The position numbers were made by a program, and so were the translations under genes. Of a DNA stretch of 64,000 bases, positions 7,117-64,000 are shown in pieces. This DNA is from Pavona decussata. Lineage: Eukaryota. A model generated the notes under the pieces. The model searched no databases, was not told the origin of the DNA, and saw only the letters and a program-made list of their open reading frames with translations. The DNA is taken from positions 4,216,001 through 4,280,000 of the forward strand of contig CDRNST010000062.1 of the NCBI GenBank assembly GCA_977016875.1. The letters run 5' to 3'. Each line of letters opens with the position of its first letter. Within the stretch, counting starts at the first letter, position 1.

Positions 7117-10100
7117 TCATTCATTGAAATCCAAAAAGAAAGAAAAGAAAGAAAATCCAAACCTACAAACCACAAACCTACTACGGGCTGAACTCTGAAG
7201 TACTGGGTTCAAATATGAAATCAACTGGTCCACATACGAGCTACTCTTGGGGCTGAGAATGCTGGATGTAGAGAGGCCACCTAAACGAAAGAAAAATTTT
7301 AAGGAGCAGGTTAAGTAGCAGTCTTGTCTCTAGCCGGGAATTTAAGATGATGGATTCGAAATTGTCGTTCAACGCTCTCTAATTTCAAAATAAGAACATT
7401 ATTATCCTGTAGCTATACATATTTGACCCTGAAGAGGATGTTTTGTTGCGGGCATGAAAACAGGCAGTGGTAACTCACGACCTTCAGGTAGGTGGGTGGC
7501 CCACTCTCAAACGCTGGACTTCCTTCTCTTTGTGAAACAAAATATCTCGGAGCCTCGACTCTACGGGCCTCGGTTTGGTGTAAAAAAAATAAGATGGGGA
7601 GGGGGTGGGGAGAGGAACCTTCCTTTGATCCACCAGCGAAAGGGATAGATGGTTTGAACAAAAAGCCTGTTATTGCGGGGAGACAATATCTAGTAAAGTG
7701 CAGTTTCGGGTGCATTTAACATGTCATGATGATATGCCTTTCTGTAAATTGGTTAATGACATGTTATTTGCACTATTTACTTGACCACAGCATCAGCCGA
7801 TCACCGCGATTAAGAGGAAAACTCACGTTTATACACGCAGTAGTGTCCGTTTCCATGATAGTTTGACTGACAAGCACAGCTGTAAGACCCCACGGTGTTT
7901 GTGCAAACGGCGTTCGCGTGACAATTGTGCGAGCCACTTGTACATTCATTGACATCTGAAAATTTTGTTACATCGAAACAAAACTACTCAATGTCATGTT
8001 TGAATGTTTATCACATCATAACACAACTCATTATCTGATACCAGTACAAGACACTGCACTGAAACGCATGCGCTAGAGGATTTCCACGCATGCGCATAGC
8101 TCATTACCCTCAAATATCCTAATGTGAATAATTGTACAGCTGCCTTGTTACTTAATTGCATAAATGCATATTTGTTAACTTGGTCCACGCAGCAGTGATT
8201 AAATTTTTTCTTAGGTAATCCTCGTTTTCAGTTTCACTATAGTTATCTGTAAATACCGTTGAGTAATATTGTGTGATTGCAAAAATGCGCATTTTCGTAT
8301 GCAACTGTACTGAACAAAGTTGTTTTCTTAAATCGTTTTAAAATATGTTCATTAGATTAGAACAGTTTTGAATTGATCATGAGGGTGGAAAGTTAGTTCG
8401 CTTTTGTTATGGTTTTGCTTTACGGAGATCTTTGATTGGTTAGCAAAACTCGCGCTACCTTCTCAACAGATGAGAAGAAAAACCACCATTAACCAATCGC
8501 GACTTGTCCGTACTCGTTTTACCGTGTTTAACACCATTATAGTTACATGTATTTACTTTGAGTTCCGATTGGTTTATTGTATTTTTTTTTTATTTAAACA
8601 TATTTTATTGTCAAAGTTTGCCCCAAGAGAAAAAAAACTCATCGAGAGGGCTCATTAACGCCTGTAGTGATTACTTCACGATACTCAATGAAAAAAACTG
8701 CTCTATTATACCATTTACATCGTCGTCATCATCACCATCATCATCATCATCATCATCATCATTATTATTTCTACATGTACGAAAAGTCGTACCATTACAT
8801 CAAATAGTATCCTATGAGCTGTTACCACAAGCAAAAGAACTCTTCCATTTCTTACCGCTGCAAGTTTTTCCATTTCCAGTAAAACCGGGTTTGCACGTAC
8901 AAACATAGGAACCGATATTGTTAACACAATTGGCTTTGGCGTGACAAACTGCAGGAGAAGCGCTACATTCATCAATGTCTGAGGAAAAACAATAGTAAAA
9001 GACACTGAGTTAGTTCTATACACACACACACACACACACACAAAAAAAAATTTGCTAGGCTTTTTGAAACCGTATATGCTGACAGAAAACATCACGATTT
9101 TAGTTGGTGAACCTGTTACATGTTTTTTCTTTTCTCTTATAGTCTGTTTACAGCATTTCGTTCGTTTAACCTCATAGAAGAATAAAAGTAACTTTCTCTT
9201 GTTGATTAAGATACAGTCCATTATTAGTAGTAATAAATGAGCTACGATCGCAGTTAAGAACGAAAATCAGTGACTGTGATTGTCTCATTTATTTATTCTT
9301 TTATCCACTGTTCAAATATATGAACTGCATACACTCCACTTCCATCCCGGAGGTATGATAGGAATTCACAAAATGACCAGCTTCCAGTTGGCTTGATAGC
9401 TCAGTTGGTAGAGATGATGTATCGTTATCACAGGGGCCATGGGTTCGAATCCCTTTTAACCCTGAAGTTTAAGAGGTTGTCGTATTTAAGTTGCTTAAGT
9501 TGGGTATACAACTTCGATGGTCGTTCACTTCTCAATTCGTTCATTCACAGTTCAACTTGTATATGACTTTCATAGTCATGGAAGCCTATTACTCAGATTG
9601 CTCAGCTAACATAAATGCATTATTTTTGAGTTCCGTTTTCATTGTCCGCCCAATTTCAAGAATGGAAACGATTGAATGCGAGGTCTCCTGAGTGGAATTT
9701 ACTGAAAATGCATTCATTTGCAATACGAAAACAACTTTTAAAATGCCGTTATTTGAAGCATGGTTAATGTAAAGGCTGAAGAATTTTACTTCTCTTGTGT
9801 CCCGACCGCTGGTCAATAGGAACGAAGACTTTGGGTACGAGATTGGCATCGACACTTGCATCCTTTTCTTGTTACGTGGACTACTTGACAACGATGATTC
9901 GTTTCGTCAAGGCCTGCTGAACGTGATCAAAATGGCTGTGCGATGCAAGGTATAACGCTATCCAGCGGATAAAATGTACTTCAACCAATACATTTTATCA
10001 GCTGGATAAAGTTATCTACTCTTTGAACATGTGGGGCCTAGCCGATAAATCGGTGGTACGTGTAAATTAGTCTTAAGACAACATTTTGTCCTCTTATTGA

Positions 10101-29300: not shown

Positions 29301-31995
29301 GTACAAACATAGGAACCGATATTGTTAACACAATTGGCTTTGGGGTGACAAACTGCAGGAGAAGCGCTACATTCATCAATGTCTGACGAAACACAATAGT
29401 AACAGAAACTGAGTTAGTTTTTAGGTTCCTACACAATAAGCAAAGAAACAAATTTGCCAGGCTTTTTTTTAACTATGTGCTGACAGAAAACATCACGATT
29501 TGAGTTGGGGAACCTGTTACATGTGTTTTCTTTTCTCTCGTAGTCTGTTTACAGGATTTCGTTCTTTTAACCTTATAGAAGAATGAAAGTAACTTTCTCT
29601 TGTTGATTAAGACACAGTCCATTATTAGTAGTAATAAATGAGCTACGATCGCAGTTTAGTTCGGATATCCGTAACTGCGATTGTCTCATTTATTAATTGT
29701 TTAATCCACAGTTCAAGTATATGAACTGCATACACTCTACTTGCATCCGGCTTCATTTCAACAGGTATGATAGGAATTCACAAAATGACCAGCTCCCAGT
29801 TGGCTTGATAGCTCAGTTGGTAGAGATGGTGTGTCGTTATCACAGAGGTCATGGGTTCGAATCCTTTTCAACCCTGAAGTTTAAGAGGTTGTCGTATTTT
29901 AATTGCTTAAGTTGGGTATACAACTTCGATGGTCATTCACGTCTCAATTCTTTCATTCACAGTTCAACTTGTATATGACTTTCATATTCACAGAAGCCTA
30001 TTGCCCAGCTCACATAAATGCATTATTTTTGAGTTCCGTTTTCATTTTCCGCCCAATTTGGAGAATGGAAACGATTGAACGCGAGGTCTTCTGATTAGAA
30101 TTTACTGAAAATGCATTTATTTGCAATAAGAAAACAACTTTTTCAATGCCGTTATTTGAAGCATGGTTAATGTAAAGACCGAAAAATTTTACTCAGCTCT
30201 TGTTTCCTGATCGCTAGTCAAGGGGAACGAAGACTTTGGGTACGAGATTGGCATCGACACTTGCATCCTTTTCTTGTTACGTGGACTACTTGACAACGAT
30301 GATTCGTTTAGTCAAGGCCTTCTGTACGTGATCAAAATGGCTGTGCGATGCAATTTTGAATCCGAAGGCAAGACTTCGTCACTTCGTTGTTATTGCCTTT
30401 ACATAAACAAGCGCATGTGCAAATGCATGATGGGTAAAGTACGATCAAAGATGGCAGCTTTTACCACAATGCCTTGCAAGCCGATCACAGCTTATAGGCT
30501 GCTTCCCGACCAACAACATTGTGTATGCTAAGTTTGAAGATTTTGGAACTTTTCTGTGCGTTTTAATGAGCTTTTATAGTGTTTTTGTACGCTAAGAACT
30601 ATGGGTAAAAATATGAGCCGCCATGTTTTTTGGTACAGCAGATTATCATCACCTACGTTCAACTTTCTATGCCTCATGCTACACGCTTAACGTCCGGCTC
30701 CCTGCATTTTGATCCTCGCTTCATTTGCGCATTCTTTGCACTCACTCTACCCGCGCAACAGCCCAGTTAGCTTATAGAATCAAATCTGTGACCAGTCTTT
30801 TACACACCTTCGGTTGCCATGTTACAGTCAGCGAGGACATTCGTTCCTGGTATGATGGAGTAGAACCAGTATTTGCCACTGACAGCTTGTCCTCCTTCAT
30901 TCGCTTTTATTTCTTTGCAAGACTTGGCCGGCAGCTTAGAGATGGAGCCGAGAGGAACTGTGAAGATGAAGCCATTTAACAAAGTTAGCTTATTCTGAGT
31001 AGGAATATACATAGCTGTGGTGCTGTTTGTTATGTTATGAAGGTGTGCTTATTTTTGGGTCTGTGGATGAAATCCTATAAAGTGTGACCATTCAAATGAA
31101 AACTTCTGAGTAGTACGTTCCTGTGGTGCTGTTAATTATGCTGTATAAGGTGGTTCTAACTTTTGAGTCAATGGATGAAATTCTAAAGTGTGACCATTCA
31201 AATGAAAGCTATTGAGCAGTACTTTTCTGTGGTGCTGTTTATTAGGCTATACAAGCTCACATGGTTCTAACTTTTGATTCAATGGATGAAATCCTAACGT
31301 GTGACCATTCAAATGAAAGCTACCGAGCAGTACGTTCCTGTGGTGCTGTTTATTATGCTGTACAAGCTAAGGTGGTTCTAACTTTTGAGTCAATGGATGA
31401 AATCCTAAAGTGTGACCCGTTCAAATGAAAGCTACTGAGTAGTACTTTCCTGTGGTGCTGTTTATTATGCTGTACAAGGTAGTTCAAATATTTGAGTCTG
31501 TGGATGAAATTCAAAAGTGTGACCATTCAAATGAAAGTTACTGAGTAATACTTTCCTGTGGTGCTGTTTATTATGCTGTATAAGGTGGCTCGAATATCTC
31601 AGTCTGTGGACGAAATCGCGGTTATTATTGAAATAAAAAAGAAAAAACATCCAAACATAACTTTAACTCATACCTCTCCTGACATCAAGCTTGACGTAAT
31701 ATCGATCAGGGTCCTTAACAAAATTATCTGGACTCGCTTCCTTCGTGCGGTTGTTCCATTCACACACACTCTCCGAAACCACGAAGTTAAAACTTTGACA
31801 GACGTCTTCTTCTCTGCATACGAACAGACATTCAGCATGGCCAGATGGTGCATAGCGCTTGTTATAAGTGTGTCCCTGTAACTTCATGCCGGAGATTGGC
31901 AGCTGACGGGGTCCATTGCACTGCTCAGCAGTTGAGGCTTTGTGAACCAGGCCAGTTACAGCGATCGCGAGGATGATTGGTGTAAACGCGGCCAT
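26351..31995 (-). CDS. Secreted PAN/apple + SCKEIK module + 2 Ca-binding EGF + TLDc protein (copy B, 431 aa)
   Basis: Exons 31995-31674, 30957-30808, 29382-29260, 28630-28502, 27314-27063 and 26670-26351; all introns GT-AG phase 1; 1296 nt open. Signal peptide [23 protein letters not shown]; PAN cysteines; DIDEC/DINEC EGFs; TLDc motifs WRASSHGW...[16 protein letters not shown]...IFGGYT, AFIYSL, GPAFGRG, IEVF. Confidence 0.88.
27348..27988. mobile_element. Kolobok-like MITE in gene B intron 4
   Basis: TIR GGTGATTCC/GGAATCACC with TTAA/TGAA flanks; gene A has the empty GGTTAAGT site at ~7310. Confidence 0.8.
31015..31620. repeat. ~107-bp minisatellite in intron 1 of gene B (5-6 units)
   Basis: Units start near 31017, 31124, 31229, 31340, 31452 and 31558. 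Confidence 0.85.
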
Positions 31996-43729: not shown

Positions 43730-46598
43730 AGTATCAGTCAATCGAGCAGTTATGTTTTCGTTGTCCAATTTTCTTGAATCCGAGGTAATGCACCTGAGAT
43801 ATACTTGCCGGAGAAGTTCAAAGGCCTTTCTGTTTCATCAATTGCGTGACACTCAAAATGCTAAGCCCTAAAACAGTCACGACCTTCGAGAAGGCTCTTG
43901 GCCAATATTAAACTTGAGTCGGTGGCAATAAACATGCCTATACATAAAATAAGTCACAGTTTTTAATTAAGAGTTTCTCGGAAAAAAAAGAAAACGATGT
44001 CTTGTGGATCAGGAGGTCGACTAAACTAACTAACAACTCATGATCATGTAGCCAGATCTAGAGCCGTTATGTTTCATGAACAAAGGGTTGACTTTGGCAG
44101 TGAAATTGGTGCTGTGAAGCTAATTTCAGCATGTTGATTTATCTGTCTTAGTTTGGAATATTGAATAACTTGGGGCGTGTTTTTGTGATCAAACTGAGTC
44201 AGCTCTTTTATTGTTTTCCTGTTTTTCCGGGAAATGTCCGTTAAAATCTGTGATGTGGGCACGTTTTCACCCGCTCTAATTAACCTTGGCTAGGGCCTCC
44301 TCGAAGGTTGGAATTGAAAAAAAAATACTTTTAAGTATTTTTTTTTCAATACGTAGTTATTTTAATTTCCTTTCCCCCTTGCATACACAGACTGAGGGGA
44401 CTGGCTAGGGAGATGTACACCTCCCCCACTAATGAGCACATGGAGTACTTGACTACAAATATTTTAGGGATTAAAGAGGTCGGATCAGAATTTTGGAGTG
44501 TCAGGCACACTGGTAAAGCAAATAGGCCTGAGACAACTTTTTTTGAGACAGTATATCTCAGGTGCATTACCTCGGATTCAAGAGAATTGGACCGCGAAAA
44601 TATAACTGCCTGATAGACTGATAGATTGTTTGACATCACGTGATCAGTAGAGCAACAACTATAAAGAGTTGTAAGATATTTTAAGCGTAATGGCAATACC
44701 GGGCGCAGTTTGCTAGGCTAGAACTTGGAAACAAAACTCAAACTCGTTGGGGATAAGACTTTGGTTATTTTTCATCAGATTTTTCATGGCCTACAAACTT
44801 ACAATAATACAAGAAAAAAAGGCTCAGTTGAACAAATAAGTAAAAAATTATACAGGAAGAAGATTGCGGATTGATTCCTTGATTTGCTGACAAAGAAGGA
44901 GGGTTACATAACACACCTCTGTTGTCGTACTGCGTACGACAACATTTGGCTAAACCGCTCGCTATATCGTGATTTTCAAGCCTATTACGGGATTCTCACA
45001 CGATGGTGATCTATGTTTATAAAGATTCAAAGTTCAAATGACGAACCTAAGACTTCTTCTGGCAATCAACACACCCTTACCCTCTATCACAAATAACTGA
45101 TTCATTTAGCCATGTGAAGCTCTGCGCAGAAGATCAAATTCCTAATTAGACATCATTCGAATTCAGAGATTTTCAGAAGCGCCAGGAAAGCTGAAACTCT
45201 GAAATCTTTGATAACTACCATAAAAAAATATTTAACTTTCTCTGTATACAAACAGCCTGATTGCAAAATAATTTTATGACAGAATTGACTTTAAGGAAAG
45301 TCAATAGTTTGTGTTAATTTTTTGTTGTTGCACAATCGACTTTGTTTTTTTTTTTTTAGCGGTTCCTTTAAATCATTTTGGAAACACTGACAGGTGGTAG
45401 TGACAAGTTTTTTTCTCTCTAATTGTCAAAAGTCTGTTTTACGGAAAATACAGACTTTTAACACCGCACAAGGCTTGGTCAACTGTCTACGATTCTTCAA
45501 ACAGGGGTCATTGATTCATTGGCAGCTACAGAACTCCTTTGAGCACATGCGGTATTGTTTTTGAACGTGCTTTAAGACTTTATATGGCTAATTAAGTATC
45601 TTCACAATACTTAATTGGCCATAGCACGTTCAAACACATTCCTAACGGCTGCCTGTAACCCAATACCGCTTGCACTCAAACGTTATCGTCCCACTAGTAA
45701 TAAATCATTACAAGCACTCCAGTGACGCTAGCTTGGTTTGACTGTGATTCAGCTATGAACGAAGGACAGGTCTGCACGCAGACAGACAACCCGTATAGCT
45801 GGTATATGAAACCAGGCGTCACCGTCTTGCACTAAGTGCTTTAAAAGAACACTTGAAGGTTTCAGGATCAAATACAATGTTCAAGCAAAGGAGCGCTTTT
45901 AGAATGCTCCTACCTTTTCCAGCCAAAACATTTGAATATTTTAATGTTATATCAGTTGAGTTTGTTGTCCTTGCTGTTCAATTTTATATAGCTATATTAT
46001 AGAAAATAAACTTGTTGCGTTTGGTTTGCGTGGTTTCTCATCTTCATATATTCATATGTTATTACTTAGCTATAGCGATAACTTGTTTATAGAATACTCG
46101 ACAGTGAAATAAAGAGGCCTGTTGGCAGCCTTGTATAGAACGGAGTAGTAAAACAGTGAAATATCTGGCTTTTACAAAATTTATTAACAGCTGACACAAA
46201 ACGCTGTGTAATACAAGGCTTGTTATTACATCTTGCAACTACAGAAAAGCTTCAGATTTCAATACAATCTCCCGATTAATTGGCCTTTCTCTTCAGACTC
46301 AGTCTTACAGTCATTTTGTTTACACTGCGGGACATCATAAACAGCGGGCATAGCACTGGGTTCACCCTCCATTATTAGTACAAATTTGGTGGCACTTGCC
46401 GGCTAATCTTTCTATGCATTTCTGGTCATTAACTTCATTTCTACCTTTACAAATACCACAACCATGTCTTGATGCCATCATGCTTGGGTCCGGTAAAAGA
46501 ACCAAATCAAAATATTCTGGTAAGAGTTAAGCCGGCGTCAGTCTCCACATTCATTTAAGTATAAGCAGGTTTGGTGATTAAAGGCGTAACTTTCGAAT
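43730..46598 (+). repeat. Diverged direct duplicate of about 54672-58458 (includes the distal msrA 3' UTR)
   Basis: Colinear matches (43760 vs 54705, 44400 vs 55345, 45900 vs 57728, 46500 vs 58361) with a large deletion near 44710. Confidence 0.9.
46298..46355 (-). promoter_or_regulatory. Degenerate duplicate SECIS (core and helix II kept, 3' arm of helix I deleted)
   Basis: Near-identical to 58162-58219, but lacks the 27 nt between the CTCAGT direct repeats seen at 58135-58167. Confidence 0.7.
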
Positions 46599-52627: not shown

Positions 52628-54289
52628 TTATTTTTTACTTTCTCCTGCTTCACTTAGACAGGGAAAATTTCGTTGGGGGTCAACATGTTATACCAAACTT
52701 GGGCACAGTCCTGTTTATGATTGTTGCTTGGATATGCATGAAGATTTGAAATCGTTTAATATTTTTTCTCGGGGATGGGGGGGGGGGGGGGAAATTCCAT
52801 CCATTCAGCGCCTTCTCCCCCTTTCCTACCACCCCTATTGGTCTTATTAGGGTTAAAGAGGTCACCTTACGTTAAATGTCGCGTAAAGTATGTGACTGTT
52901 AAAATTCCTGGGATCTACTAAGAAGCCATGACACTTCTTTCATGATTATTATCCGTGAAATCAAACTTACTTTTTTTAATTTGTCATGAAGTGTGAGTTC
53001 TGTAGAACTAACACTTGAGTTTGAATTACGGCACATCATGTTGGCCAAGCCAACAGGTGTTTGACAATTAGAAAGAAAAAAGTTGTCACTACCGCTCCCT
53101 GTGTTTCCAAAATGATTTTAAGGAATCAGCAAAAAACAAAGTCGATCAACAACAAAAATTAAGACAAACTATTGACTTTCCTTAAGTCAATTCTGTCAGC
53201 TTGGGTAATTTTGTCTTCAAATTATCTTGCAATCAGGCTGACCGAGAAAGTTCAATATGTTTTTTATGGTAGTTATCTGAGATTTTTATAGTTACAGCTT
53301 CCCTGGCGTCTCTGTAAATCTCTTAAGAAGAATGATGTCTAATTAGGAATTTGATCTTCCGCGCAGAGCTTTACATGACGACTTTATTTGTGATATTGGG
53401 CAAGAGAGTGTTGAGTGCGAAAAGAAGTCTTAGGTTTCTCATTTGAACTTTGAATTTTCAGAACAATAGATCACCATCGTGTGAGAAACCCGAGATATGC
53501 AGGAAAATCACGATTTCACGAGCCTTTTAGCCAAATGTTGGCGTACGCAGTAAAAATACTCATTTTCATACTTGACGTAGATCCTTTAAAAGAGGTGTGT
53601 TCTTTAGCTCTCCTTCTCTTTCAAAAAATTCAGAGCGATCAAGGAATCAATCCGCCTCCATCCCCATCTTCTGCCTGTGCAGAAGACTAATATCTGTGAA
53701 TAAATCCTTCTTGAACGCGAAACTGATACTTCCCGTGGGATGAGCGCCGTCTGCATCACCTGATACATCTGATCACCCTTGCTCTCTTAACTTAATCTGT
53801 GACGCACATTGTTTTTGCCATATAGTCTATTTAGTATTCCATTGAGAACAAAGAAAAGTTAAATTTGAACTTAAATTTTGTTAGCTCAGGAAAGGTGTTG
53901 AGAACAATTACTCTTTTATCGTCGTCTTAAGTTCTTAAAGTGATTCAGTGTCTTTGAATAGTGCTACAGAAGTCTTCTGCGCACAGCAAATTGTTCAATT
54001 TTACCAATCTCGCGAAAGACACGATTAACACCGACAGTAGTTTTCGCTTTGAGAATCAAGCCTTACTGAAGATTCGACGTTACGTACCTTCAGTGCAGCG
54101 ACCACCACCAAGAATTGCACTGTGTGCTTTCACTTTCTTCTCCAACCGAGCCTGTCTTTGTCGGATGTTATCCAGCACTCCACAAACGCTCCTAAGCGTA
54201 CACTGTTGCTGGCGTGACGCATTACCTATTACTCCGTTAACAATCACCACCAAAAAGGTGCACACGACAAAGAAAACGAAGTTTTGCAT
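48097..54289 (-). CDS. Secreted protein: signal peptide, short coiled coil, two tandem ConA-like/DUF1080-like beta-sandwich repeats (427 aa), lectin-like
   Basis: Exons 54289-54088, 51769-51505, 49869-49566, 49020-48800 and 48388-48097; phases 1,2,0,2; 1284 nt open. Repeat motifs GH(L/P)G.FN..DE.N(F/Y)DFVYFR, C(Y/F)QTGY, GPP(K/R)G..WF.V.V.V, GY.NVI.FR.F.I. AATAAA at 47883-47878. The fold assignment is inference. Confidence 0.82.
50040..50585. repeat. Degenerate (CAGT)n-derived low-complexity tract in intron 2 of the lectin-like gene
   Basis: Seen directly. Confidence 0.9.
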
Positions 54290-57073
54290 GTTCTCCGCGC
54301 ACAAGATCTGTTTCCGAGCGAATGAACAGTTAAGTCATCCGACACGCCTTTTAATCCCCAGATGACAGTGATATCAGACTCCTTTGTTTTATGCTCCAAT
54401 CAGATACCAGCTCAGGTTCTGATTTGATGAAAGGCGCTGAGAAGTCTCCTTTCTTGAAAGCGATTTGTTCCGTGTTCGACCTTAAGTGCGAAACTACGTG
54501 GTTTGTTACAACATCCGGTTTTTTTTTTGTTATTGATTTCGTACCAGAAGGTTTTGACATTTTTTTTTCCGGCTTGAAAATATCAGTTTAATGTTACAAA
54601 TCCACTAAGGCAATAACGCTTAGCTCACATGCAACTCTTAGCTTGTTGCTCCGTCACATGATGTCAAACAATCTATCAGTCTATCAAGCAGTTATATTTT
54701 CGCAGTCCAATTTTCTTGAATCCGAGGTAATGCACCTGAGATATACTTGCCGGAGAAGTTCAAAGGCCTTTCTGTTTCATCAATTCCGTGACACTCAAAA
54801 TGCTAAGTCGCTCTCTGTATCCCTAAAACAGTCACGACCTTCGAGAAGGCCCTCGGCCAATATTAATCTTGAGTCGGTGGCAAACATGCCTATACATAAC
54901 ATAAGTCACAGTTTTTAATTAAGAGTTTCTCGGAAAAATAAGAAAACGAAGTCTTGTGGATCAGGAGGTCGACTAAACTAACTAACGACTCATGATCATG
55001 ATGTAGCCAGAGCCGTTATGTTTCATGAACAAAGGGTTGACTTTGGCAGTGGAATTGGTGCTGTGAAGCTAATTTTAGCATGTTGATTTATGTCTTAGTT
55101 TGCCGAATATTGAATAACTTGGGGCGTGTTTTTGTGATCAAACTGAGTCAGCTCGTTTTTAGTTTCCTGTTTTTCCGGGAAATGTCATTAAAATCTGTGA
55201 TATGGGCACGTTTTTACCCGCTCTTTAACCTTGGCTAGGGCCTCCTCGAAGGTTGGAATTGAAAATAAATGCTTAAACATTTCATTAACTTACCTAGTTG
55301 TTTTTTAAAATCTTCTTTTCCCCCTGCATACGCAGACTGAGGGGACTGGCTAGGGAGATGTACACCTCCCCCACTAATGAGCACATGGAGTACTTGACTA
55401 CAAATATTTTAGGGATTAAAGAGGTCGGATCAGAATTTTGGAGTGTCAGGCACACTGGTAAAGCAAATAGGCCTTAGACAACTTTTTTTGAGAGTATATC
55501 TCAGGTGCATTACCTCGGATTCAAGAGAATTGGACAGCGAAAATATAACTGCCTGATAGACTGATAGATTGTTTGACATCAAGTGACCAGTAGAGCAACA
55601 AGCTATAAAGAGTTGGAAGCTGAGCGTGATGACAATATGTGGTGCTGTTACATTAAACTGATATTTTCAAGCCGGAAAATGAAATACTTCGTTTTCAGTA
55701 ATCATTGAGTCTCTCTCTTGATTCTCAAAGCGAAAACTACGGTCGGTATTAATTGTGTCCGTTTTGTGAGATTGTTTTTGTGCACAGTTGGAGAAGACTT
55801 TTGTAGAACTGTTCAAAGACACTGAATCACTTAATGAACTCAAGAGGACGATAAAAGTGTTCTCAACAACTTTCCTGAGCTAATAAAATTTAAGTTCAAA
55901 TTAAACTTTTCTTTGTTCTCAATGGAATACTAAATAGACTATACAGCAAAAACAATGTGCGTCACAGATTAAGTTAAGAGAGCAAGCGTGATCAGATGTA
56001 TTAGGTGATACAGATGGCGCTAATCCCATGGGAAGTATCAGCTTCACGTTTAATCCTGTTTAGGTCCACGTTTAGATATTCAACTGTAGTGTCAACGTTA
56101 AAACAAAGGATTGTGCATGGCCGCGGCCCTTCCAACATAAAATGCAGCACCATTGTAATTAACTTTGAACATGACAAGGTTTAATTCATAACCAATCCCT
56201 CAATTAACTATGATGCCAACTTTCCTCGGCTAGAACTTGGAAACAAAACGCAAACTCGTTGGGGCTAAGACTTTGCCTATTTTTCATCAGATTTTTCATG
56301 GCCTACAAACTTACAGTAATAAATCACAAACGAGGCATTAAAAACTTTAACATAGGTCAGGGCCGAACAAAAAGGCTCAGTAGGAAAAATAAGTACAAAA
56401 TTACACTGGACGAAGATGGCGGTTTAATTCTTTGATCGCTCTGGATTTTCTGACTAAGAAGGCCGGAGAAGTAAAGAACAGACCTCTTTAAAAGGATCTA
56501 CGCTAAAGTATGAAAATGATCGAGTATTTTTTTACTGCGTACACCAACATTTGATGAAAAGGTTCTTGATGTCGTGATTTTTCTGCGTATCTCGGGATGG
56601 GCCGGATTTTCGCACGATGGTGATCTTTTATTCTAAAGATTCAAAGTTCAAATGAGAGGGGGAACCTAAGCCGTCTTCTCGCAGTCAACACACCCTTACC
56701 CTCTGTACTCTCTATCACAAATAAAATTCATTTACCATGTAAAGCTCTGCGCGGAAGATCAGATTCCTATAATTAGACTTCATTCTAATCATAACTATGT
56801 TCTAAATCAGAGATTTACAGAGACGCAAGGAAAGCTGTGACTTTGAAATCAATCTTTGATAACAACCATAAAAAAATATTTAACTTTCTCGGTCAGCCTG
56901 ATTGCAAAATAATTTGAAGACATAATTAAAAAGCTGACAGAATTGGCGAAGGAAAGTCAATAGTTTGTGTTAATTTTTGTTGTTGATCGACTTTGTTTTT
57001 TACTGATTCCTTAAAATCATTTTGGAAACACTGACAGGTGGTATTGACAAGTTTTGTTCTTTCTAATTGTCAA
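53060..57073. repeat. Large imperfect inverted repeat (arms ~53060-54830 and ~55403-57073, spacer ~570 bp)
   Basis: 53061-53185 is the reverse complement of ~56950-57073; 53720-54070 of ~55700-56045; 54565-54830 of ~55403-55680. Confidence 0.88.
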
Positions 57074-57350
57074 AAGTCTGTTTTACGGAAAACACAAATA
57101 TTTAACGCCGCACAAGGCTTGGTCAACTGTCTACCATAATTCAAACGGGGGTCATTGGCAGCTACAGAACTCACACTTTCATGACAAATTTTGAGTACAT
57201 GCGGTGTAGTGTTTTTCGGCCGTTGAGAATTGGAACGTGTCACAAGTCTTTGTATGGCTGATAAAGTATTGTTAAGTCTTACGACGCGTTTAAATTGCCA
57301 ACGGCTGCCTGTACACCAATACCGCTTGCACTCAAAGGTCATCGTCCACC

Positions 57351-57417
57351 TAGCCTGCGAGTAAGCTCTCTTGGGGGTAGGGGGCCTCCACCCCCAAGAG
57401 AGCTTGCTCGCAGGCTA
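57351..57417. mobile_element. Short palindromic TA-flanked MITE
   Basis: TAGCCTGCGAGTAAGCTCTCTTGGGG...CCCCAAGAGAGCTTGCTCGCAGGCTA; absent from the duplicate at ~45690. Confidence 0.75.
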
Positions 57418-58139
57418 CGTCCCACCAGTAATTAATCACAAGCTCTCTAATGACGCGAGCTTGGGTTCCCTGTAGTTCAGCTATGGCCTGCGAGCAAGCT
57501 CTCGGGGAAGAGGTGGGGGAGGGAGTGAGAAGGAGAGAGACAAGCTCTCTTCTTCCCTCCCCCTCTCGCCCCACCAACCCGTATATAAAACAAGGCGTCA
57601 CTGTCTCGCACCAGGTGCTTTAAAAGAACACTTGAAGATTTCAGGATCAAGTACAATGCCCAAAAAAAGAACGTTACAAAAAGTGTTTCGTTTAAACTGA
57701 AACATCTTTGAATACTCGAGCGCTTTTAGAATGCTCTTGCGTTTTCCAGCCAAAACATATGAATATTTTCCCTGTTATATCAGTTGAGTTTGTTGTCGTT
57801 ACTGTTTAATTTTATATAGCTTCATTATAGAAAATAAACTTGTTGCGTTTAGTTTGCATGGTCTCTCCTCTTTATATATTTATATGTTTGCACTTAGCCA
57901 TAGCAATAACTTGTTTATAGAATACACGACAGTGATATAAAGAGGCCTGTTGGCAGCCTTGAGTATAGAACGGAGTAGTAAAACAGTGAAACCTCTGGCT
58001 TTTACCAAATTTATTAACAGCTGACACAAAATGCTGTGTTACACAAGGCTTGCTATTACATCTTACAACTCAGTTACAGAAATGCTTTAGATTTCAATAA
58101 TGAATCTCCCAATTAACTATCCTTTCTCTTCAGACTCAG

Positions 58140-58219
58140 TGCTACCCCAATGTGTTAGTTTCTCAGTCTTACAGTCATTTTGTTTACACTGCGGGACATC
58201 ATAAACAGTGGGCATAGCA
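58140..58219 (-). promoter_or_regulatory. SECIS element in the inferred msrA 3' UTR
   Basis: Minus strand reads TGCTATGCCCACTGTTT-ATGAT-GTCCCGCAGT-GTAAACAAAATG-ACTGTAAGAC-TGAG-AAACTAACACATTGGGGTAGCA. It has the AUGA/GA core, helix II with 8 of 10 pairs, AAA 12 nt after the core, and an extended helix I. AATAAA follows at 58015-58010. Confidence 0.85.
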
Positions 58220-58471
58220 TGGGTTCACCTTCCATTATTAGTGCAAATTTGTTGGCACTTGCCTAATCTTTCTATGCATTTCTGGTCATTAACTACATTT
58301 TTACCCATTACAAATACCATAACCATGTCTTGATGCCATCATGCTTCGGTCCGGTAAAAGAACCAAATTTAAATATTCTGGTAAGAGTTAAGCTGGCATC
58401 AGTCTGCACATTCATTTAAGTGTAAGAAGGTTTGTTGAACAAAGGCGTAACTTTAGAACACTAGTTATTAA

Positions 58472-58734
58472 CTCTTCAAGCCCTAACAGTGATCAGCATC
58501 AAATTTCTCCTAGTAATATCAATGCTTACTCAAGCCCCGGCTTAGCCTGCGTGTCAGGCGCTAGAAAGGGGAAGGGAGAGGGGAAGCTAGCCCCGGCTGA
58601 GGTCATGAGAATTAAGGATATGATCATCAAAGTGAATTTTCTTGATATTTTCATAACTTCTCCCTAGTACTTTTATAAGAAAAGTATGGGGACAAGATAG
58701 GAGAATTTGTTTTTTCGTATTAGGGGTTAAAGTG
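58472..58734. mobile_element. TTAA-flanked (piggyBac-like) MITE with a small nested insert (10-bp duplication AGCCCCGGCT)
   Basis: TTAA-CTCTTCAAGCCCTAA...TTAGGGGTTAAAGTG-TTAA. Confidence 0.65.
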
Positions 58735-58795
58735 TTAAACTAAGTGAAGATATGGATTAAGCACCTCGCACCTACTCTCATGACCTGTTTCTTAA

Positions 58796-59161
58796 AGGGG
58801 CACTGTCACGGCGATTTTGCTGTATATTTGTGAAAACTGCTCAAAAATTTGACTAAGAACCTCTTTTCTAACAGGAAATTAACCTTAGAGCACCGGGACG
58901 AAATATGAAATGATTTCTCAAAAGAAGAACAAACTACAATCGGTTATTACAGCCATTTTTCCAAAATACTTCTAAGAAGAAATTTGAAGTTTCAATCCAT
59001 TTCCATCCAAGCCATCTGCAGCCAAAGATGAATGAGACTAGCTTCTATGTACAAGAGGGTTTGTATTTAACAAAACTGAACAGTTATTTTAACTTTTACA
59101 TCAATGCAAAAATGTCTTTTGGCTATTCAAAGTGACACTGAAAATAAGTGACATTACCCCT
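58796..59161. mobile_element. Kolobok-like MITE
   Basis: TTAA-AGGGGCACTGTCAC...GTGACATTACCCCT-TTAA. Confidence 0.78.
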
Positions 59162-59197
59162 TTAAGCCTAATTTACATGTGCCAATTTATTGTCCTG

Positions 59198-59883
59198 GCC
59201 CCAGTTGTTCAAAGAGCGGGTAACTTCATCCACTGGATAAGTCGCTATCCAGCGGAGCAAATGTACTCTAACCAATGCTTTTGGCAAGTTAACCACACAA
59301 TCCCATTCTTAAATTTGACATATGCTTCTACTCTATCCACAAATTATCCCGGGGGGGGGGGGGGTACTCCCTAATATGGGCTATATAGGTATGTGCGGCG
59401 CCAAAGAGTATGGTTTTTCAGCCGCTTTGGTCATAAATAGGGTATCGATTTTAGCCATTTTGCCGCCATTTTGGTAATAAATAGGGTATCATATTTTGCA
59501 CTCTAGTCTTGAATTCTTTTTTTTTTTTTTGAAGAAGCTACTTCTTCATCATGATGTTTACAGCAACTGTGTACGTGCCGCAACGGCTTGTCATGCGCTC
59601 CGGTCACGCACTGGACTCCAGGGGTTCTTGAACTGGTTATAAATAGGGTATCAAATTTTTGGTCAGGTCATAAATAGGGTAGGGAAAATCGCAGAGTTTG
59701 GTCATAAATAGGGTAAGGGTTTTGGGAAGCGGGCCGCACACCCCTATCCAATTTTTTTGGGAGTACCCCCCCCCCCCCCCCAGGGAAATTATAGGGCTAT
59801 TGGGAAAATCTTGCACACATTTTATCTGCCGGATAGCGAACTATGCAGTGGATAAAATTATCCGCCCTTTGAACAACTGGGGC
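59198..59883. mobile_element. Harbinger-like MITE containing a nested poly-G/poly-C-ended MITE (59348-59785)
   Basis: Outer TIR GCCCCAGTTGTTCAAA with CTG TSD; inner CCC(G)nTACTCCC...GGGAGTA(C)nAGGG with AAATTAT duplicated. Confidence 0.85.
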
Positions 59884-60106
59884 CTGATAAGTTGGTTACA
59901 TTTCTTGGGCCAAGTTACACGTTACAATTTGTTGGCTGAATTTGTTTTCTGCTGGTGTAGTGCAGAATGAAAATCAACATTATTCAAAACAACTTCAATT
60001 GCTTACTCATGTTCAGAACAATCAGCAAACTTACAAAGTCACGAAAATGCTCTAACTAAAAAAAATTGAATCAAATGGTTTGATTTTGTTTAACTGATAA
60101 TTCCAT

Positions 60107-63100
60107 TTAGAATTGACTCTTGTTACTTATGATCTTTCGCACCATATCAGCCTGTGGTTCTGTAATTTTCAGCTCATCAACTTCGGCCTCAAACTGCTTT
60201 ACTGAGCCATGACCTCCAACATAGCCATTTAAGCGAGCAGCCACAGACGAGTTCATCAACTCCACACTGTTTAATCCAAGACTCCTCAGCAGAATGGGTT
60301 GCTGACGCAGCAAATACTTTTGGTGATAACTGAAAAGCAACAGACCATTACATGTAACTTGAGGTAAGCTTACTGATAATGTGAAGTCAATTTGTATGAT
60401 GTCATCACTTCAGTAGTCCCCTGGCAAATGCCAGCAGCATATCTGGGGGGAGGGGAGAGTGCGGCACAGATCTCCTACAGTGTACTTATCATCAGACAAA
60501 ACAAGGTCTGGAGAGCAAAATATTTTTCCATTCTAGCTGAAACATTTTCACTCCAGGCCCACATGCCTCTACTTTACACAATGTCCTGGACCTGCCATTG
60601 AACTATGCACACCATTATGAGCCATGCTGGAGTTCTCTTTCCCACAGTGTAGGAAATAATCTAAAGTCTTCTTAAAATTAAAATTGGTAAAAAGGGGCTT
60701 AAAACTGATCTAAAAAACTTAAAAAGTTTCCCCAAATTTTCGAACCGTATCTCTGGTTCTTCTTCGCGGGACAAGAACCAGAACCGGAAATAAGGTTCGA
60801 AAATTTGGGAAACTGTTTAATTTTTTTAGATCAGTTTTAAGCCTCTTTTAACCAATTTTAATCATGAACACTGATTGCCAAAAAAACGTCTTCTTAAAAG
60901 CCTGACATAAAATCCACCATCTTGACCACATAACAGAATAATAGATTCGGTAAGAGAAACAAAGAGAGCATAACAGAAAAATTTAGGTTAATTAAGTCAA
61001 CATTAAAAATTTTTGAAGTACATACTCCTCTGCATCGTAAAATCTTTTTGCTGGAAGAATCTTTGTCACTATGGGTCTCCTAAGGGTCTTCTGATGTTCA
61101 TCACAAGTCTGCTCTGCAAGCTGTTTTTGTTCATCGTCATGGTAGAAAATCGCTGACATATATTGTGCTTTGTGGCTAGTTGTAGGATCATGATTTTTCC
61201 AAAACATGGCTAACAGATCACCGTATGTTGTACGGTTTGGATCATATTCCAGCTGAACAGTCTCTGTATGGTTCCCGCTGTAAAATGTAGAGAAAAAAAT
61301 GGAATGACAAAAATTCTAAACACCAAAAATACATTGCCTATGTGTTTAAACATATCTTCCAACTACAGTACCACTGTACACACAAATTTAAAATGTTGGC
61401 CACAAACAACTACATGCTGGTTTCTATGTGGGTTGTTTACAACTGAACATTAAAAAAACACATAAAAATATTACAACTAAATATAAATGAAGGCAACACA
61501 TTTGAAATTACAGCACATGAATAATCACTGTACCACAAAGGATACACTACTATTATAATCCGTGCCAATTTCTGTTGGGAATCTGGTCTGGTTAGAAAAC
61601 AAGCCTGGTATAGCAAAATTTGCCTTGCCATCGATTTGGCAAGCTTAGCCTATTCTTTCAGATTGCTCCAGAGCAAACCACCACTAAATTGAAAACTGCA
61701 TATTGAGGAAAATTTGTATTAGGCTTTGGAATTGCATGAAAGCTAAATGTGTCTTCCTGTATCTGAGTTAGTATTTTTTCCCCACAATCACTGACTTTAA
61801 GGATCAGGTTTCTCAAGTACCGTAAGGAGCATGTTGATTGTTTACAATTTTATACTTTAGAATTGACTTAGCTCTCATACGCCTTGAGTCAAAGGATAGC
61901 TGTTGTAGTTCATTCAAAAATATCTTTGCTCCAGATACAGTATAACATTACTCCAGCTGCTCTAGACTGATATTTTTGTAACTTGTCTTTCTAGACCTTA
62001 TCAGGTCTCACCTGGCTCCAGGCTAACGTTTGAGCTCAGTATCCCAGTGACTACTGTGACAGGTCTGGTTTTGCTACATGTAGGCTGTCTAGCCAAAACA
62101 AAATTTTCACTAGCAACAGTTTCACTATTTCATTTCATGAAAAGGGGAGAGAGAGGGAACTCAGACACTTTTTATTAGATGTGAAATAATTATTAAGAAC
62201 AAATCTCCCTCACTTGTAAAAGTTTTGTTACTGTTTACAAATTGCATTATTTGTGACTGAAATTTCAAATTGACCTTAACATGAAAAAGCCTACCTATAC
62301 AGCAAAAAAAGCAGCCAAAAAAGGTAAATTGATATCTAGGAAAAATGTGGCTTATTTGAGCTTATTTGAGCTCGATTAAAGTTTTAGTTTCATTAACAAT
62401 CTGTACATGAATTTTAATGTTTGAATGGTAATGGAGTCAAATCAATAATTTTTAAAATTACCAGTCTGTGGTGCTACCCGGTTACCAGTAGTCTCGGCCC
62501 TAGGTATTCCAGAGAGGGGTGCAATAGTTAAAATAACTAGTGTTACAGAGTGCTCACTATACAAAATAGACATCTATAGATGGTCAGTGAGGAAAATTTA
62601 GATTTTATCTCTTGCACAGTTTGGGTATGTACTCCCAGGGGGGGTACTCGGGTGTATTAGTGACGGGGAGGTGCGAATGAGGCCAAATTTTGAAACCCAA
62701 AAAAAGTCCCGTCACGCTAAGGAAAACCCAAAAAAAGTCCAGCAGCCAAAAACGTAACCCAAAAAAAGTCTGATACAAGATGATGGATCGTTAACAAATA
62801 AACCACTATAACTTAACGAGAGTTGTCTTTGTCTTGTCATTTTATTTGCATGATTTAAACTTGTTAGTGAAATCGTTTTGCGTAAAATCAAGAATGGTAG
62901 GGCACAATTTTCATCAACCCCAAAAAAAGTCCTCGCCAAAATCTTAAGGGCAAAGAAAGTCCAGCAGAAAATTTCAAACCCCAAAAAAGTCCCAAGCCGA
63001 GAATTTCAAACCCAAAAAAGGTCTTCGCACGTCCCCGTCACTAATATACCCGAGTACCCCCCCTGGGTATGTACTTCCAGATTACCATCTGTTAAAATGG

Positions 63101-63880
63101 TTATGTCACTACAGGAACTGTCTAGTCATCTTTCATCAAGAAAAGCTAACATTAATTTATACGTTTTGAATAAAAAAAACTCCAGTATAACAATGATTCA
63201 GCATTTCCTATGAACCCCCACCCCTGACCCCCCACCTAGGAACACAATCGCTTGACTCAACAAATTATATTGTTGAAAGCAAAATTCCACAGCAGTTTAT
63301 CAGCTACTAATAAAATATTACGGTATAAGCATAAAAATCCTAGCCAGTGATCTTTCTTAGTATGCTAGCTTGCATACTTAACTAGCAGATACTGTATAAA
63401 CTAAGCACTGTACGACTGAAAAAAGCTCAACTTACATCTTCAAAATTATTAAGGAAAATCATGCTATTATTAGTATTTGAACCAGACTTTTATAAAGGTC
63501 ACAAATGTAGGGCCGTGTATTCCACAGTTAATCTCAAATATATCAAGGGCGACTAAAAGTCAACAGACAGCGCAAAAGCAGGCTAACTGAAGTCCTCCTC
63601 TTCCACGATGTTCTGTAACACGGTCAAAACTCCCAGATTTCGCATGGAATTTCATGTCAAATACAGGAATTAAGACAAAAAAAAAGTCCAAAACACTTCA
63701 CTATTAAATTCTTTGTCCTCCATTAACAACTTACAGGCTGGTGTAGGTCGGAAACGGCTTGGCTCCGCCAGTGTAGCCGACCTTAGTTCGAACGACGCCA
63801 TTAGCACATCCAAACTGAGCCTCGGGAAACCAAAATCAGCTCATAGCAAACGTGGCTGTCTTGGTTTCGACATCCGCCAT
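60107..63880 (-). CDS. msrA: Peptide methionine-S-sulfoxide reductase A, probable selenoprotein (Sec at codon 15), 206 aa
   Basis: Exons 63880-63735, 61277-61026 and 60329-60107; GT-AG introns, both phase 2; 621 nt. The translation MADVETKTATFAMS*FWFPEAQFGCANGVVRTKVGYTGG...GNHTETVQLEYDP...FWKNHDPT...QYMSAIFY...FYDAEDYHQKYL carries all MsrA motifs. TGA at 63838-63836 occupies the Cys position of GCFWG. Confidence 0.95.
60678..60861. repeat. ~180-bp imperfect palindrome in msrA intron 2
   Basis: TTAAAATTGG...CTTAAAACTGATCTAAAAAA...CCCAAATTTTCGAACC mirrored by GGTTCGAAAATTTGGG...TTTTTTAGATCAGTTTTAAG...CCAATTTTAA. Confidence 0.8.
62634..63067. mobile_element. MITE with 8-bp TSD in msrA intron 1
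   Basis: TIR CCCAGGGGGGGTACTCGGGT(G/A)TATTAGTGACGGGG; TSD TATGTACT on both sides. Confidence 0.9.
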
Positions 63881-64000
63881 GTTGTCGAGAGGTGGTTTAA
63901 CTACCTCAACAGTGCTACCTAGTGTATTGCCCGTTTTGAATGAAGAAATCGCCCGCAAAGAACGAAGAAATGTTGCTATAAATAAAGAACGAGACATCAC

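What the first reader, a model, noticed from the sequence alone, without database searches (positions are those of the whole stretch)
58140..58219. SECIS hairpin 1.9 kb downstream of the msrA stop completes the recoding system
Seen on the minus strand: AUGAU (58202-58198), helix II GUCCCGCAGU/ACUGUAAGAC (7 Watson-Crick pairs, 1 GU, 2 C-A mismatches), loop GUAAACAAAAUG with AAA at 58185-58183, UGAG (58165-58162), and helix I UGCUAUGCCCACUGU/ACAUUGGGGUAGCA. AATAAA follows about 125 nt later. Known: this is the eukaryotic SECIS pattern bound by SBP2. It is on the correct strand and side to serve the msrA UGA.
Basis: partly seen in the sequence, partly recalled or inferred. Interest (0 to 1): 0.85.

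Follow-up and report, generated by a model that had tools for sequence, protein, structure and literature searches.

The report
Probable atypical SECIS of selenoprotein msrA
The hairpin is real and is very probably the signal that lets this marine-invertebrate-type msrA gene read its UGA as selenocysteine, a known kind of system, though this copy is imperfect, sits far downstream because mobile elements were inserted, and lies in a duplicated block.

Summary
The gene is a three-exon msrA on the minus strand (PMSR + MsrA_helical domains) with UGA at the catalytic position. Six orthologous transcripts from other organisms have UGA at the same site, and two of them carry a clear 3'-UTR SECIS. Three RNA runs show exact splicing, no intron coverage, coverage of every non-repeat part of the 3' UTR including the hairpin, and a poly(A) tail at 57996, 14 nt after the AATAAA. 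A SECIS grammar scan ranks the hairpin first in all 128 kb of the window. It scores inside the range of this genome's accepted SECIS elements, and only 2 of 1000 UTR shuffles match it.

Against it: no Rfam SECIS model matches, although those models find 7 of 10 comparable elements. Helix II has two consecutive C·A mismatches, and the AUGA-to-AAA spacing is 13 nt rather than 12.

New points: three mobile-element insertions account for the 1.9-kb distance. The hairpin also lies in a tandemly duplicated block with three other copies behind an ordinary gene; two of those copies have lost one helix I arm.

Verdict: probably the functional msrA SECIS (about 0.7); a new member of a known kind; modest interest.

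The parts
63735..63880 (-). msrA exon 1: ATG at 63880, in-frame UGA (Sec codon) at 63838-63836 in ...ATFAMS-U-FWFPEAQF...
   Evidence: Translation. The post-UGA piece hits Pfam PMSR. The exon 1 to exon 2 joint 63735|61277 is seen in three RNA runs.
61026..61277 (-). msrA exon 2 (PMSR domain)
   Evidence: Pfam PMSR, E = 4.8e-23. Exact GT..AG joints in RNA contigs. Single copy in the genome.
60107..60329 (-). msrA exon 3 (MsrA_helical domain), stop TAA at 60109-60107
   Evidence: Pfam PF20939, E = 1.9e-21. Stop position.
57996..60106 (-). 3' UTR, 2,111 nt, ending at the poly(A) addition site at 57996
   Evidence: RNA contigs cover 59861-60329, 58796-59232, 58081-58426 and 57996-58110. A 22-T loose end on the + strand at 57996 is a poly(A) tail on the minus strand. 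Contigs break at repeats, so no single contig shows continuity.
59197..59884 (.). Nested mobile element with terminal inverted repeats, inserted in the UTR (68-nt arms; an inner element has G14/C14 ends)
   Evidence: Inverted repeats I1-I4 and I6. Raised depth in the DNA and RNA runs.
58791..59166 (.). Second element with terminal inverted repeats in the UTR (19-nt arms)
   Evidence: Inverted repeat I5.
58459..58790 (.). High-copy insert. Its edge at 58458/58459 is also where homology with the duplicated block ends.
   Evidence: DNA depth up to about 226,000 against a single-copy depth of about 32. Boundary.
58140..58219 (-). Candidate type 1 SECIS: helix I 58219-58205 / 58153-58140; AUGA 58202-58199; helix II 58197-58188 / 58175-58166; apical loop 58187-58176 with AAA at 58185-58183; UGAG 58165-58162
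   Evidence: Sequence, fold, grammar rank 1 of 128 kb, shuffle test 2/1000, transcribed. No Rfam hit.
58010..58015 (-). AATAAA polyadenylation signal, 14 nt before the observed poly(A) site
   Evidence: Sequence and the poly(A) loose end at 57996. Kept in 3 of the 4 paralogous copies.
54224..58458 (-). Spacer S1 of an ~11.8-kb tandem-array unit. The SECIS and the poly(A) site lie in its first ~460 nt on the minus strand.
   Evidence: BLAST against the other units on the same contig, 77-89% identity.
45891..46597 (-). In-window paralogous copy of the SECIS-bearing segment. It has lost 27 nt, including the 3' arm of helix I.
   Evidence: Its grammar score falls to -13.1.

Best explanation
The hairpin at 58219-58140 (minus strand) is the SECIS element of a selenocysteine-containing msrA. 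The gene encodes a methionine-S-sulfoxide reductase whose catalytic residue is specified by UGA (63838-63836). The mRNA is spliced from three exons and carries a 2.1-kb 3' UTR that ends at a poly(A) site at 57996. In that UTR the hairpin would offer a kink-turn core (AUGA opposite UGAG, tandem sheared G·A pairs), a 10-position helix II and an unpaired AAA in a 12-nt apical loop. By analogy with other eukaryotic SECIS elements, this structure recruits SBP2 and the eEFSec/Sec-tRNA complex so that the upstream UGA is read as selenocysteine.

Shown here: the UGA and its conservation, the splicing, transcription and polyadenylation, the motifs and fold, and the presence of tRNA-Sec and other Sec genes in the genome. 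Inferred: protein binding and actual recoding.

The unusual 1.9-kb distance is explained by three mobile-element insertions. Without them the hairpin would lie about 490 nt after the stop. The hairpin is also the first part of a block that was tandemly duplicated together with the neighbouring gene. The most economical history is a duplication with one breakpoint inside the msrA 3' UTR, which left passenger copies that are now decaying.
For: (1) The gene needs a SECIS. UGA sits at the catalytic position of a PMSR + MsrA_helical protein. UGA is at the same site in six orthologous transcripts, L023, L024, L028, L029, L054 and L055. Two of these carry a canonical 3'-UTR SECIS 341 and 55 nt after the stop.
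(2) The machinery is present: three tRNA-Sec genes at 75-78 bits, and several GPx genes with one in-frame TGA followed by SECIS elements.
(3) Transcript evidence: RNA runs from three studies show exact joints 60329|61026 and 61277|63735 and zero intron depth. Contigs lie on all non-repeat UTR pieces including 58081-58426, and a poly(A) tail is added at 57996.
(4) It is the only SECIS-grammar element in the UTR and the best in the 128-kb window. Its -22.8 kcal/mol falls within the -19.1 to -28.0 range of six Rfam-supported SECIS elements of the same genome, and 2 of 1000 shuffles reach it.
(5) No conventional SECIS exists anywhere else in the window.
(6) All three allelic variants in the hairpin in the RNA contigs keep the structure: loop A>G at 58178, C-G to U-G at 58212, and A-U to G-U at 58220. 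None touches AUGA, GA, AAA or helix II.
(7) The msrA-linked copy has no lineage-specific substitutions in the 58-nt core, against 2.75 expected (P = 0.064). The passenger copies have a 27-nt deletion of the helix I arm and a C·C mismatch in helix II.
Against: No Rfam SECIS model matches, even in a 121-nt search at E<=10. The same model gives 24-31 bits to seven other elements. Helix II has two consecutive C·A mismatches, a feature the SECISearch3 authors use to downgrade candidates (PMC3753652). The AUGA-to-AAA spacing is 13 nt, against 12 in all ten comparison elements. A genome-specific core model gave only 12.4 bits (E about 5), but its training alignment was flawed. The fold z-score is only -1.75. 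RNA contigs break at the repeats, so no single molecule links the coding sequence to the hairpin. The sequence is not unique to msrA: three paralogous copies lie behind a gene that is not a selenoprotein. Conservation among the copies is not significantly above the flanks.
Confidence: 0.7

Rival explanations
1. The hairpin is a chance look-alike. The functional SECIS of msrA is somewhere else, or has a form that neither Rfam nor my grammar recognises.
For: No covariance-model support. Tandem C·A mismatches in helix II and a 13-nt spacing not seen in ten other elements. Fold z-score of -1.75.
Against: Only 2 of 1000 shuffles give an equal candidate, and nothing else in 128 kb comes close. No other SECIS-like element was found in the UTR by strict, relaxed or Rfam scans. 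The gene's 3' direction runs into the window, so an undetected element would still have to lie in the sequence that was scanned.
Confidence: 0.15
2. The element belongs to the tandem array (the 3' region of gene X) and was juxtaposed to msrA by a rearrangement at the mobile-element boundary at 58458/58459. Its use by msrA would then be secondary or absent.
For: Homology with the other three copies stops exactly at the edge of the high-copy insert. The other copies continue together into spacer S2, with no similarity to the proximal msrA UTR. Every other copy lies about 1.7 kb downstream of a gene X copy on the same strand.
Against: Gene X ends in an ordinary UGA stop with no conserved frame beyond it and no internal UGA in its recognisable exons, so it has no need for a SECIS. 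A SECIS-quality hairpin arising there by chance is as unlikely as anywhere else. This history would also need the array edge to supply, by coincidence, a correctly oriented SECIS and poly(A) signal to a gene that requires them. A tandem duplication with a breakpoint in the msrA UTR explains the same layout without that coincidence. Two of the non-msrA copies have lost the helix I arm.
Confidence: 0.1
3. msrA in this genome is a decaying selenoprotein gene. Mobile-element insertions disrupted or displaced its original SECIS, and the UGA now simply terminates translation.
For: Three mobile-element insertions lie in the UTR. The hairpin is imperfect.
Against: The reading frame is intact apart from the UGA. 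Splicing is exact. Spliced contigs assemble in three RNA runs, with depth similar on the coding and UTR pieces. That is not expected of an mRNA that terminates at codon 15 and would be a target for nonsense-mediated decay (inference).
Confidence: 0.05

Closest known systems
Eukaryotic SECIS element, type 1 (Rfam RF00031 SECIS_1; SECISearch3 definition, PMC3753652)
   Same: Lies in the 3' UTR of a UGA-containing mRNA. Has AUGA on the 5' side and GA on the 3' side of a kink-turn core, U·U closing the quartet, a 10-position helix II, an unpaired AAA in a 12-nt apical loop and a 13-bp helix I.
   Different: Two consecutive C·A mismatches in helix II. 13 nt rather than 12 between AUGA and AAA. G rather than A/U after the 3' GA (also seen in two accepted SECIS elements of this genome). 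No score from the Rfam model.
Selenocysteine-containing MsrA of marine invertebrates and algae (Jiang et al. 2012, PMC3473315)
   Same: MsrA with Sec at the catalytic position and a 3'-UTR SECIS. That paper reports it as widespread in sponge, placozoan, cnidarian, annelid and amphioxus genomes.
   Different: Here the SECIS is 1.9 kb from the stop because of mobile-element insertions and is type 1. The two orthologue SECIS elements I recovered (L054, L055) are type 2 and lie 55-341 nt from the stop.
MsrA with the C-terminal helical domain (Pfam PF20939, 'Selenoprotein methionine sulfoxide reductase A, helical domain'; PDB 4lwj/4u66 group)
   Same: Same two-domain architecture: PMSR in exons 1-2 and MsrA_helical in exon 3. 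PDB matches 4lwj, 4lwk and 4u66 at E about 1e-14 for exon 2.
   Different: From memory, those structures are from a bacterial (clostridial) selenoprotein MsrA, which would use a bacterial-type SECIS inside the coding sequence rather than a 3'-UTR element. I did not verify this here.

Membership tests
Eukaryotic SECIS element | Lies in the 3' UTR of an mRNA with an in-frame UGA | tested here: met
   UGA at 63838-63836. RNA contigs cover the hairpin and a poly(A) tail is added at 57996. Caveat: contigs break at repeats, so continuity with the coding sequence is inferred.
Eukaryotic SECIS element | Core quartet UGAN / KGAW with tandem G·A pairs | tested here: met
   5' AUGAU (58202-58198) opposite 3' UGAG (58165-58162). 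K = U fits; W is G instead of A/U, as in two accepted SECIS elements of this genome (consensus from PMC3753652).
Eukaryotic SECIS element | Unpaired AAR in the apical loop at a fixed distance from the core | tested here: met
   AAA at 58185-58183 is unpaired in a 12-nt loop. The distance is 13 nt, against 12 in ten comparison elements.
Eukaryotic SECIS element | Helix II of about 9-11 pairs without consecutive mismatches | tested here: inconclusive
   Ten positions: 7 Watson-Crick pairs, 1 G·U and 2 consecutive C·A. SECISearch3 downgrades such candidates but does not exclude them. In the paralogous copy L035, one of the C·A positions is U-A.
Eukaryotic SECIS element | Helix I below an internal loop | tested here: met
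   13 pairs with one bulge and one mismatch; -15.2 kcal/mol, as strong as the best accepted elements.
Eukaryotic SECIS element | Match to a SECIS covariance model | tested here: not met
   No Rfam SECIS hit at gathering score or at E<=10 in searches of 64 kb, 2.7 kb or 121 nt. Calibration: the model finds 7 of 10 comparable elements at 24-31 bits.
Eukaryotic SECIS element | Conservation or covariation in orthologous UTRs | not testable with these tools
   The orthologue contigs are from distant species, and only two reach a SECIS, which is unrelated in sequence. Within the species, three allelic changes all keep the structure.
Eukaryotic SECIS element | Binds SBP2 and supports Sec insertion | not testable with these tools
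   Needs a reporter, 75Se labelling or a binding assay.
Selenoprotein MsrA (PMSR + MsrA_helical) | PMSR catalytic domain and C-terminal helical domain | tested here: met
   PF01625 on the post-UGA part of exon 1 (27.5 bits) and on exon 2 (82.5 bits); PF20939 on exon 3 (76 bits).
Selenoprotein MsrA (PMSR + MsrA_helical) | UGA at the catalytic Cys position, shared with orthologues | tested here: met
   ...F[AG]MS-UGA-FW[FH]PEA... in the window and in six orthologous contigs. Cys forms (P0024, P0025) have C at that position.

The most novel reading that the evidence does not exclude
A SECIS that works despite two consecutive C·A mismatches in helix II has been copied by tandem duplication into the 3' regions of paralogues of an unrelated secreted-protein gene that ends in UGA. 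At least one of those copies (C62 about 4.067 Mb) is still structurally intact, so the locus could be an early stage in the birth of a Sec-recoded C-terminal extension or a new selenoprotein.
Probability: 0.04. Interest if true: 0.6.

Novelty: new member of a known kind. Interest (0 to 1): 0.3.

Why it matters
It completes the annotation of a selenoprotein gene that ordinary gene callers truncate at the UGA. The closest database relatives were nearly all short ORFs beginning after the UGA or cut at exon ends. It is a concrete example of a SECIS that standard covariance models miss, which helps in judging the sensitivity of selenoproteome surveys in invertebrates. It also shows how mobile-element insertions can stretch the distance from stop codon to SECIS, and how segmental duplication scatters SECIS copies. 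None of this changes what is known about Sec recoding.

Tried and rejected
1. Rfam at gathering and permissive thresholds on the window, the UTR and the hairpin alone found no SECIS. I kept this as evidence against, but weakened it after calibration.

2. A genome-specific covariance model. MAFFT could not align the 3' halves or helix I consistently. A core-only model seeded from two elements (R1) and iterated to eight (R2) still misaligned three rows (5 of 8 pairs). Its 12.4 bits for the candidate is therefore not informative. I did not build the third model.

3. Orthologous UTR conservation. Of the eleven orthologue places I fetched, only L054 and L055 reach a SECIS. The four other transcript contigs (L023, L024, L028, L029) show no SECIS or poly(A) tail in the 3' UTR they hold, and the five genomic contigs (P0002 = L019-L022, P0001 = L030, P0004 = L031/L032, P0008 = L033) stop short of the 3' region.

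4. Gene X as the true client of the element: rejected. It has an ordinary UGA stop and the downstream frame is not conserved between paralogues.

5. Extra conservation of the hairpin among the four copies: it is the most conserved 60-nt block (3 variable columns), but others have 5-6, so this is not significant. The lineage test gave P = 0.064.

6. Target-site duplications around the UTR inserts: none obvious.

7. Residual similarity between the proximal msrA UTR and spacer S2: none.

Exons and the post-UGA piece were searched separately by reference.

Full report
OBSERVATION

- helix I: 58219-58205 paired with 58153-58140
- AUGAU: 58202-58198
- helix II: GUCCCGCAGU / ACUGUAAGAC, with 7 Watson-Crick pairs, one G·U and two consecutive C·A
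- apical loop: 12 nt, GUAAACAAAAUG, with AAA at 58185-58183
- UGAG: 58165-58162
- AATAAA: 58015-58010

An unconstrained fold returns the same helices (-21.3 kcal/mol, z = -1.75). The msrA stop codon is TAA at 60109-60107, so the hairpin begins 1,888 nt downstream.

THE GENE

msrA lies on the minus strand in three exons: 63880-63735, 61277-61026 and 60329-60107. Codon 15 is UGA, in the context ATFAMS-U-FWFPEAQF. The post-UGA part of exon 1 and exon 2 match Pfam PMSR. Exon 3 matches PF20939, 'Selenoprotein methionine sulfoxide reductase A, helical domain'.

A profile-free search of 1.8 billion proteins with exon 2 returned mostly short ORFs. Those I read mostly begin after the UGA position or are cut at an exon or contig end, which is what truncation at an in-frame UGA produces. 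Six orthologous contigs read upstream of the called ORF all show UGA at the same place: L023, L024, L028, L029, L054 and L055. Two longer relatives have Cys there (P0024, P0025). Exon 2 is single-copy in the 602-Mb genome.

The genome has three tRNA-Sec genes at 75-78 bits. It also has several GPx genes with one in-frame TGA. Sec-MsrA is reported as widespread in marine invertebrates (PMC3473315).

TRANSCRIPT EVIDENCE

I laid contigs from four public runs on 57890-63885. Runs X1, X5 and X6 come from three studies. They have zero depth in both introns and exact joints at 60329|61026 and 61277|63735, with GT..AG on the minus strand, so they are RNA. Run X15 covers the introns evenly at a depth of about 32 with no differences, so it is DNA.

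One 997-nt RNA contig joins the 5' UTR, all three exons and the first 246 nt of the 3' UTR. Further RNA contigs lie on 58796-59232, 58081-58426 (which holds the hairpin) and 57996-58110. The last of these ends in 22 T on the + strand. That is a poly(A) tail on the minus strand, added 14 nt after the AATAAA. Contigs break at repeats, so continuity from the coding sequence to the hairpin is inferred from comparable depth rather than shown by a single molecule.

The allelic differences inside the hairpin are a loop A>G (58178), a C-G to U-G change (58212) and an A-U to G-U change (58220). All three keep the structure.

IS IT A SECIS?

Evidence against. No Rfam SECIS model matches at the gathering score or at E<=10, whether I search the whole window, 2.7 kb or 121 nt.

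Calibration of that result. In the whole genome the model finds nothing above its cut-off. Run on individual loci, it gives 24.7-30.9 bits to six elements that my own scan had picked: two on C178 lying 613 nt apart, one on C177, and three 3' of GPx genes. It gives 24.2 bits to the SECIS of orthologue L054. It misses three other well-formed elements 3' of Sec-UGA genes: L016, L017 and L055. Its silence therefore counts against the candidate but is not decisive.

Evidence for. I scored a simple grammar: AUGA; an unpaired AA 12-13 nt later; GA; and the energies of helix II and of helix I. On both strands of the window only six sites pass. The candidate is first at -22.8 kcal/mol, and the next independent site scores -14.4. 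The six Rfam-supported elements score -19.1 to -28.0 on the same scale. Only 2 of 1000 dinucleotide shuffles of the 2,111-nt UTR reach -22.8. No other SECIS-like element turned up in the UTR by the strict or relaxed scans.

Ways the candidate is atypical. All ten comparison elements have 12 nt between AUGA and AA(A), and nearly all have a helix II without consecutive mismatches. The candidate has 13 nt and a 2x2 C·A internal loop. The SECISearch3 authors downgrade candidates with mismatches in two consecutive helix II positions (PMC3753652).

The genome-specific covariance model did not work. MAFFT could not place the 3' halves consistently. A core-only model iterated to eight sequences still misaligned three rows. 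Its 12.4 bits for the candidate (E about 5) cannot be used in either direction.

ORTHOLOGUES

Two orthologous Sec-MsrA transcripts reach their SECIS. In L054 it lies 341 nt after the stop, and in L055 it lies 55 nt after the stop. Both have AUGA + 12 nt + AAA and both are type 2. A 3'-UTR SECIS is therefore the rule in this family. The sequences are too diverged to test conservation of the candidate.

WHY 1.9 KB

The UTR holds three inserts:
- a nested element with terminal inverted repeats at 59197-59884 (68-nt arms)
- a second such element at 58791-59166
- a very high-copy insert at 58459-58790

Without them the UTR would be about 715 nt and the hairpin would lie about 490 nt after the stop.

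AN UNEXPECTED CONTEXT

The hairpin is not unique. Three other copies lie on the same contig and strand. The shared block runs from 58458 down to at least about 54224 (77-89% identity). It is spacer S1 of an ~11.8-kb tandem unit made of S1, S2 and 'gene X'. Gene X is a minus-strand secreted-protein gene at about 54289-48097.

Only the copy at the edge of the array is preceded by the msrA UTR. The others are preceded by S2 and share nothing with msrA.

Gene X ends in an ordinary UGA stop (48099-48097). The frame beyond that stop is not conserved in a paralogue, and its recognisable exons have no internal UGA. It has no need for a SECIS.

Among the copies:
- L035 is intact. One C·A has become U-A, one helix I pair is lost, and there are two changes in the internal loop.
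- L036 and L037 share a 27-nt deletion between two ACTGAG repeats that removes the 3' arm of helix I.
- L037 also has a C·C mismatch in helix II.

The msrA-linked copy has no lineage-specific change in the 58-nt core, against 2.75 expected (P = 0.064). Conservation among the copies is not significantly above the flanks.

The simplest history is a tandem duplication with one breakpoint in the msrA 3' UTR, at the edge of the mobile element. That copied the SECIS as a passenger. The reverse history, in which msrA borrowed the array's hairpin, needs a SECIS-quality structure to have arisen by chance behind a gene that does not use one.

VERDICT

I put the probability that this is the functional msrA SECIS at about 0.7. 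The system is of a known kind (Sec-MsrA with a 3'-UTR SECIS in a marine-invertebrate-type genome). The hairpin is an atypical new member that standard models miss. The mobile-element expansion of the UTR and the duplicated copies are modestly interesting additions.

Noticed in passing
window 37761-58458, with further units at G000:C62 about 4.058-4.077 Mb and 4.159-4.178 Mb (L041-L044): Tandem/segmental array with a unit of about 11.8 kb carrying a minus-strand gene with two beta-sandwich-like repeats ('gene X', 54289-48097, stop TGA at 48099-48097). The unit at 4.159 Mb is 97% identical to the in-window unit over 10.8 kb.
   Followed up: partly
L001 (G000:C178:193800-193847 and 194413-194462): Two well-formed SECIS elements 613 nt apart on the same strand (Rfam SECIS_1 26.1 and 30.9 bits). 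This is the arrangement expected of a SelenoP-like 3' UTR. I did not examine the upstream gene.
   Followed up: no
G000: C233:563666-564022, C189:50525-50890, C54:1050046-1050408, and C114, C310, C343, C443, C78 (L005-L013): At least seven or eight GPx genes or copies with a single in-frame TGA. The C310 and C443 copies are near-identical and may be haplotigs or recent duplicates. Several have a SECIS 1-3 kb downstream.
   Followed up: partly
window 60668-60863: A long, near-perfect palindromic element in msrA intron 2. It gives a spurious 72-bit partial match to the plant MIR821 model and is covered only in the DNA run. It is probably a foldback or MITE-type insertion.
   Followed up: no
window 9390-9463 and 29802-29875 (+): Two closely similar tRNA-like sequences just above the Rfam tRNA gathering score (29.2 and 32.7 bits), with mismatched stems. 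They may be tRNA-derived repeats rather than genes.
   Followed up: no
L012:516-558 (+) (G000:C78 about 1089414): A SECIS-grammar hit (-21.2 kcal/mol) lying upstream, not downstream, of a Sec-GPx gene. It is either a false positive or the SECIS of an unexamined upstream gene.
   Followed up: no
window 59340-59786: The DNA run X15 has a contig joint that skips 445 nt inside the nested UTR element. This suggests either presence/absence variation of the inner element or a contig from another copy.
   Followed up: no
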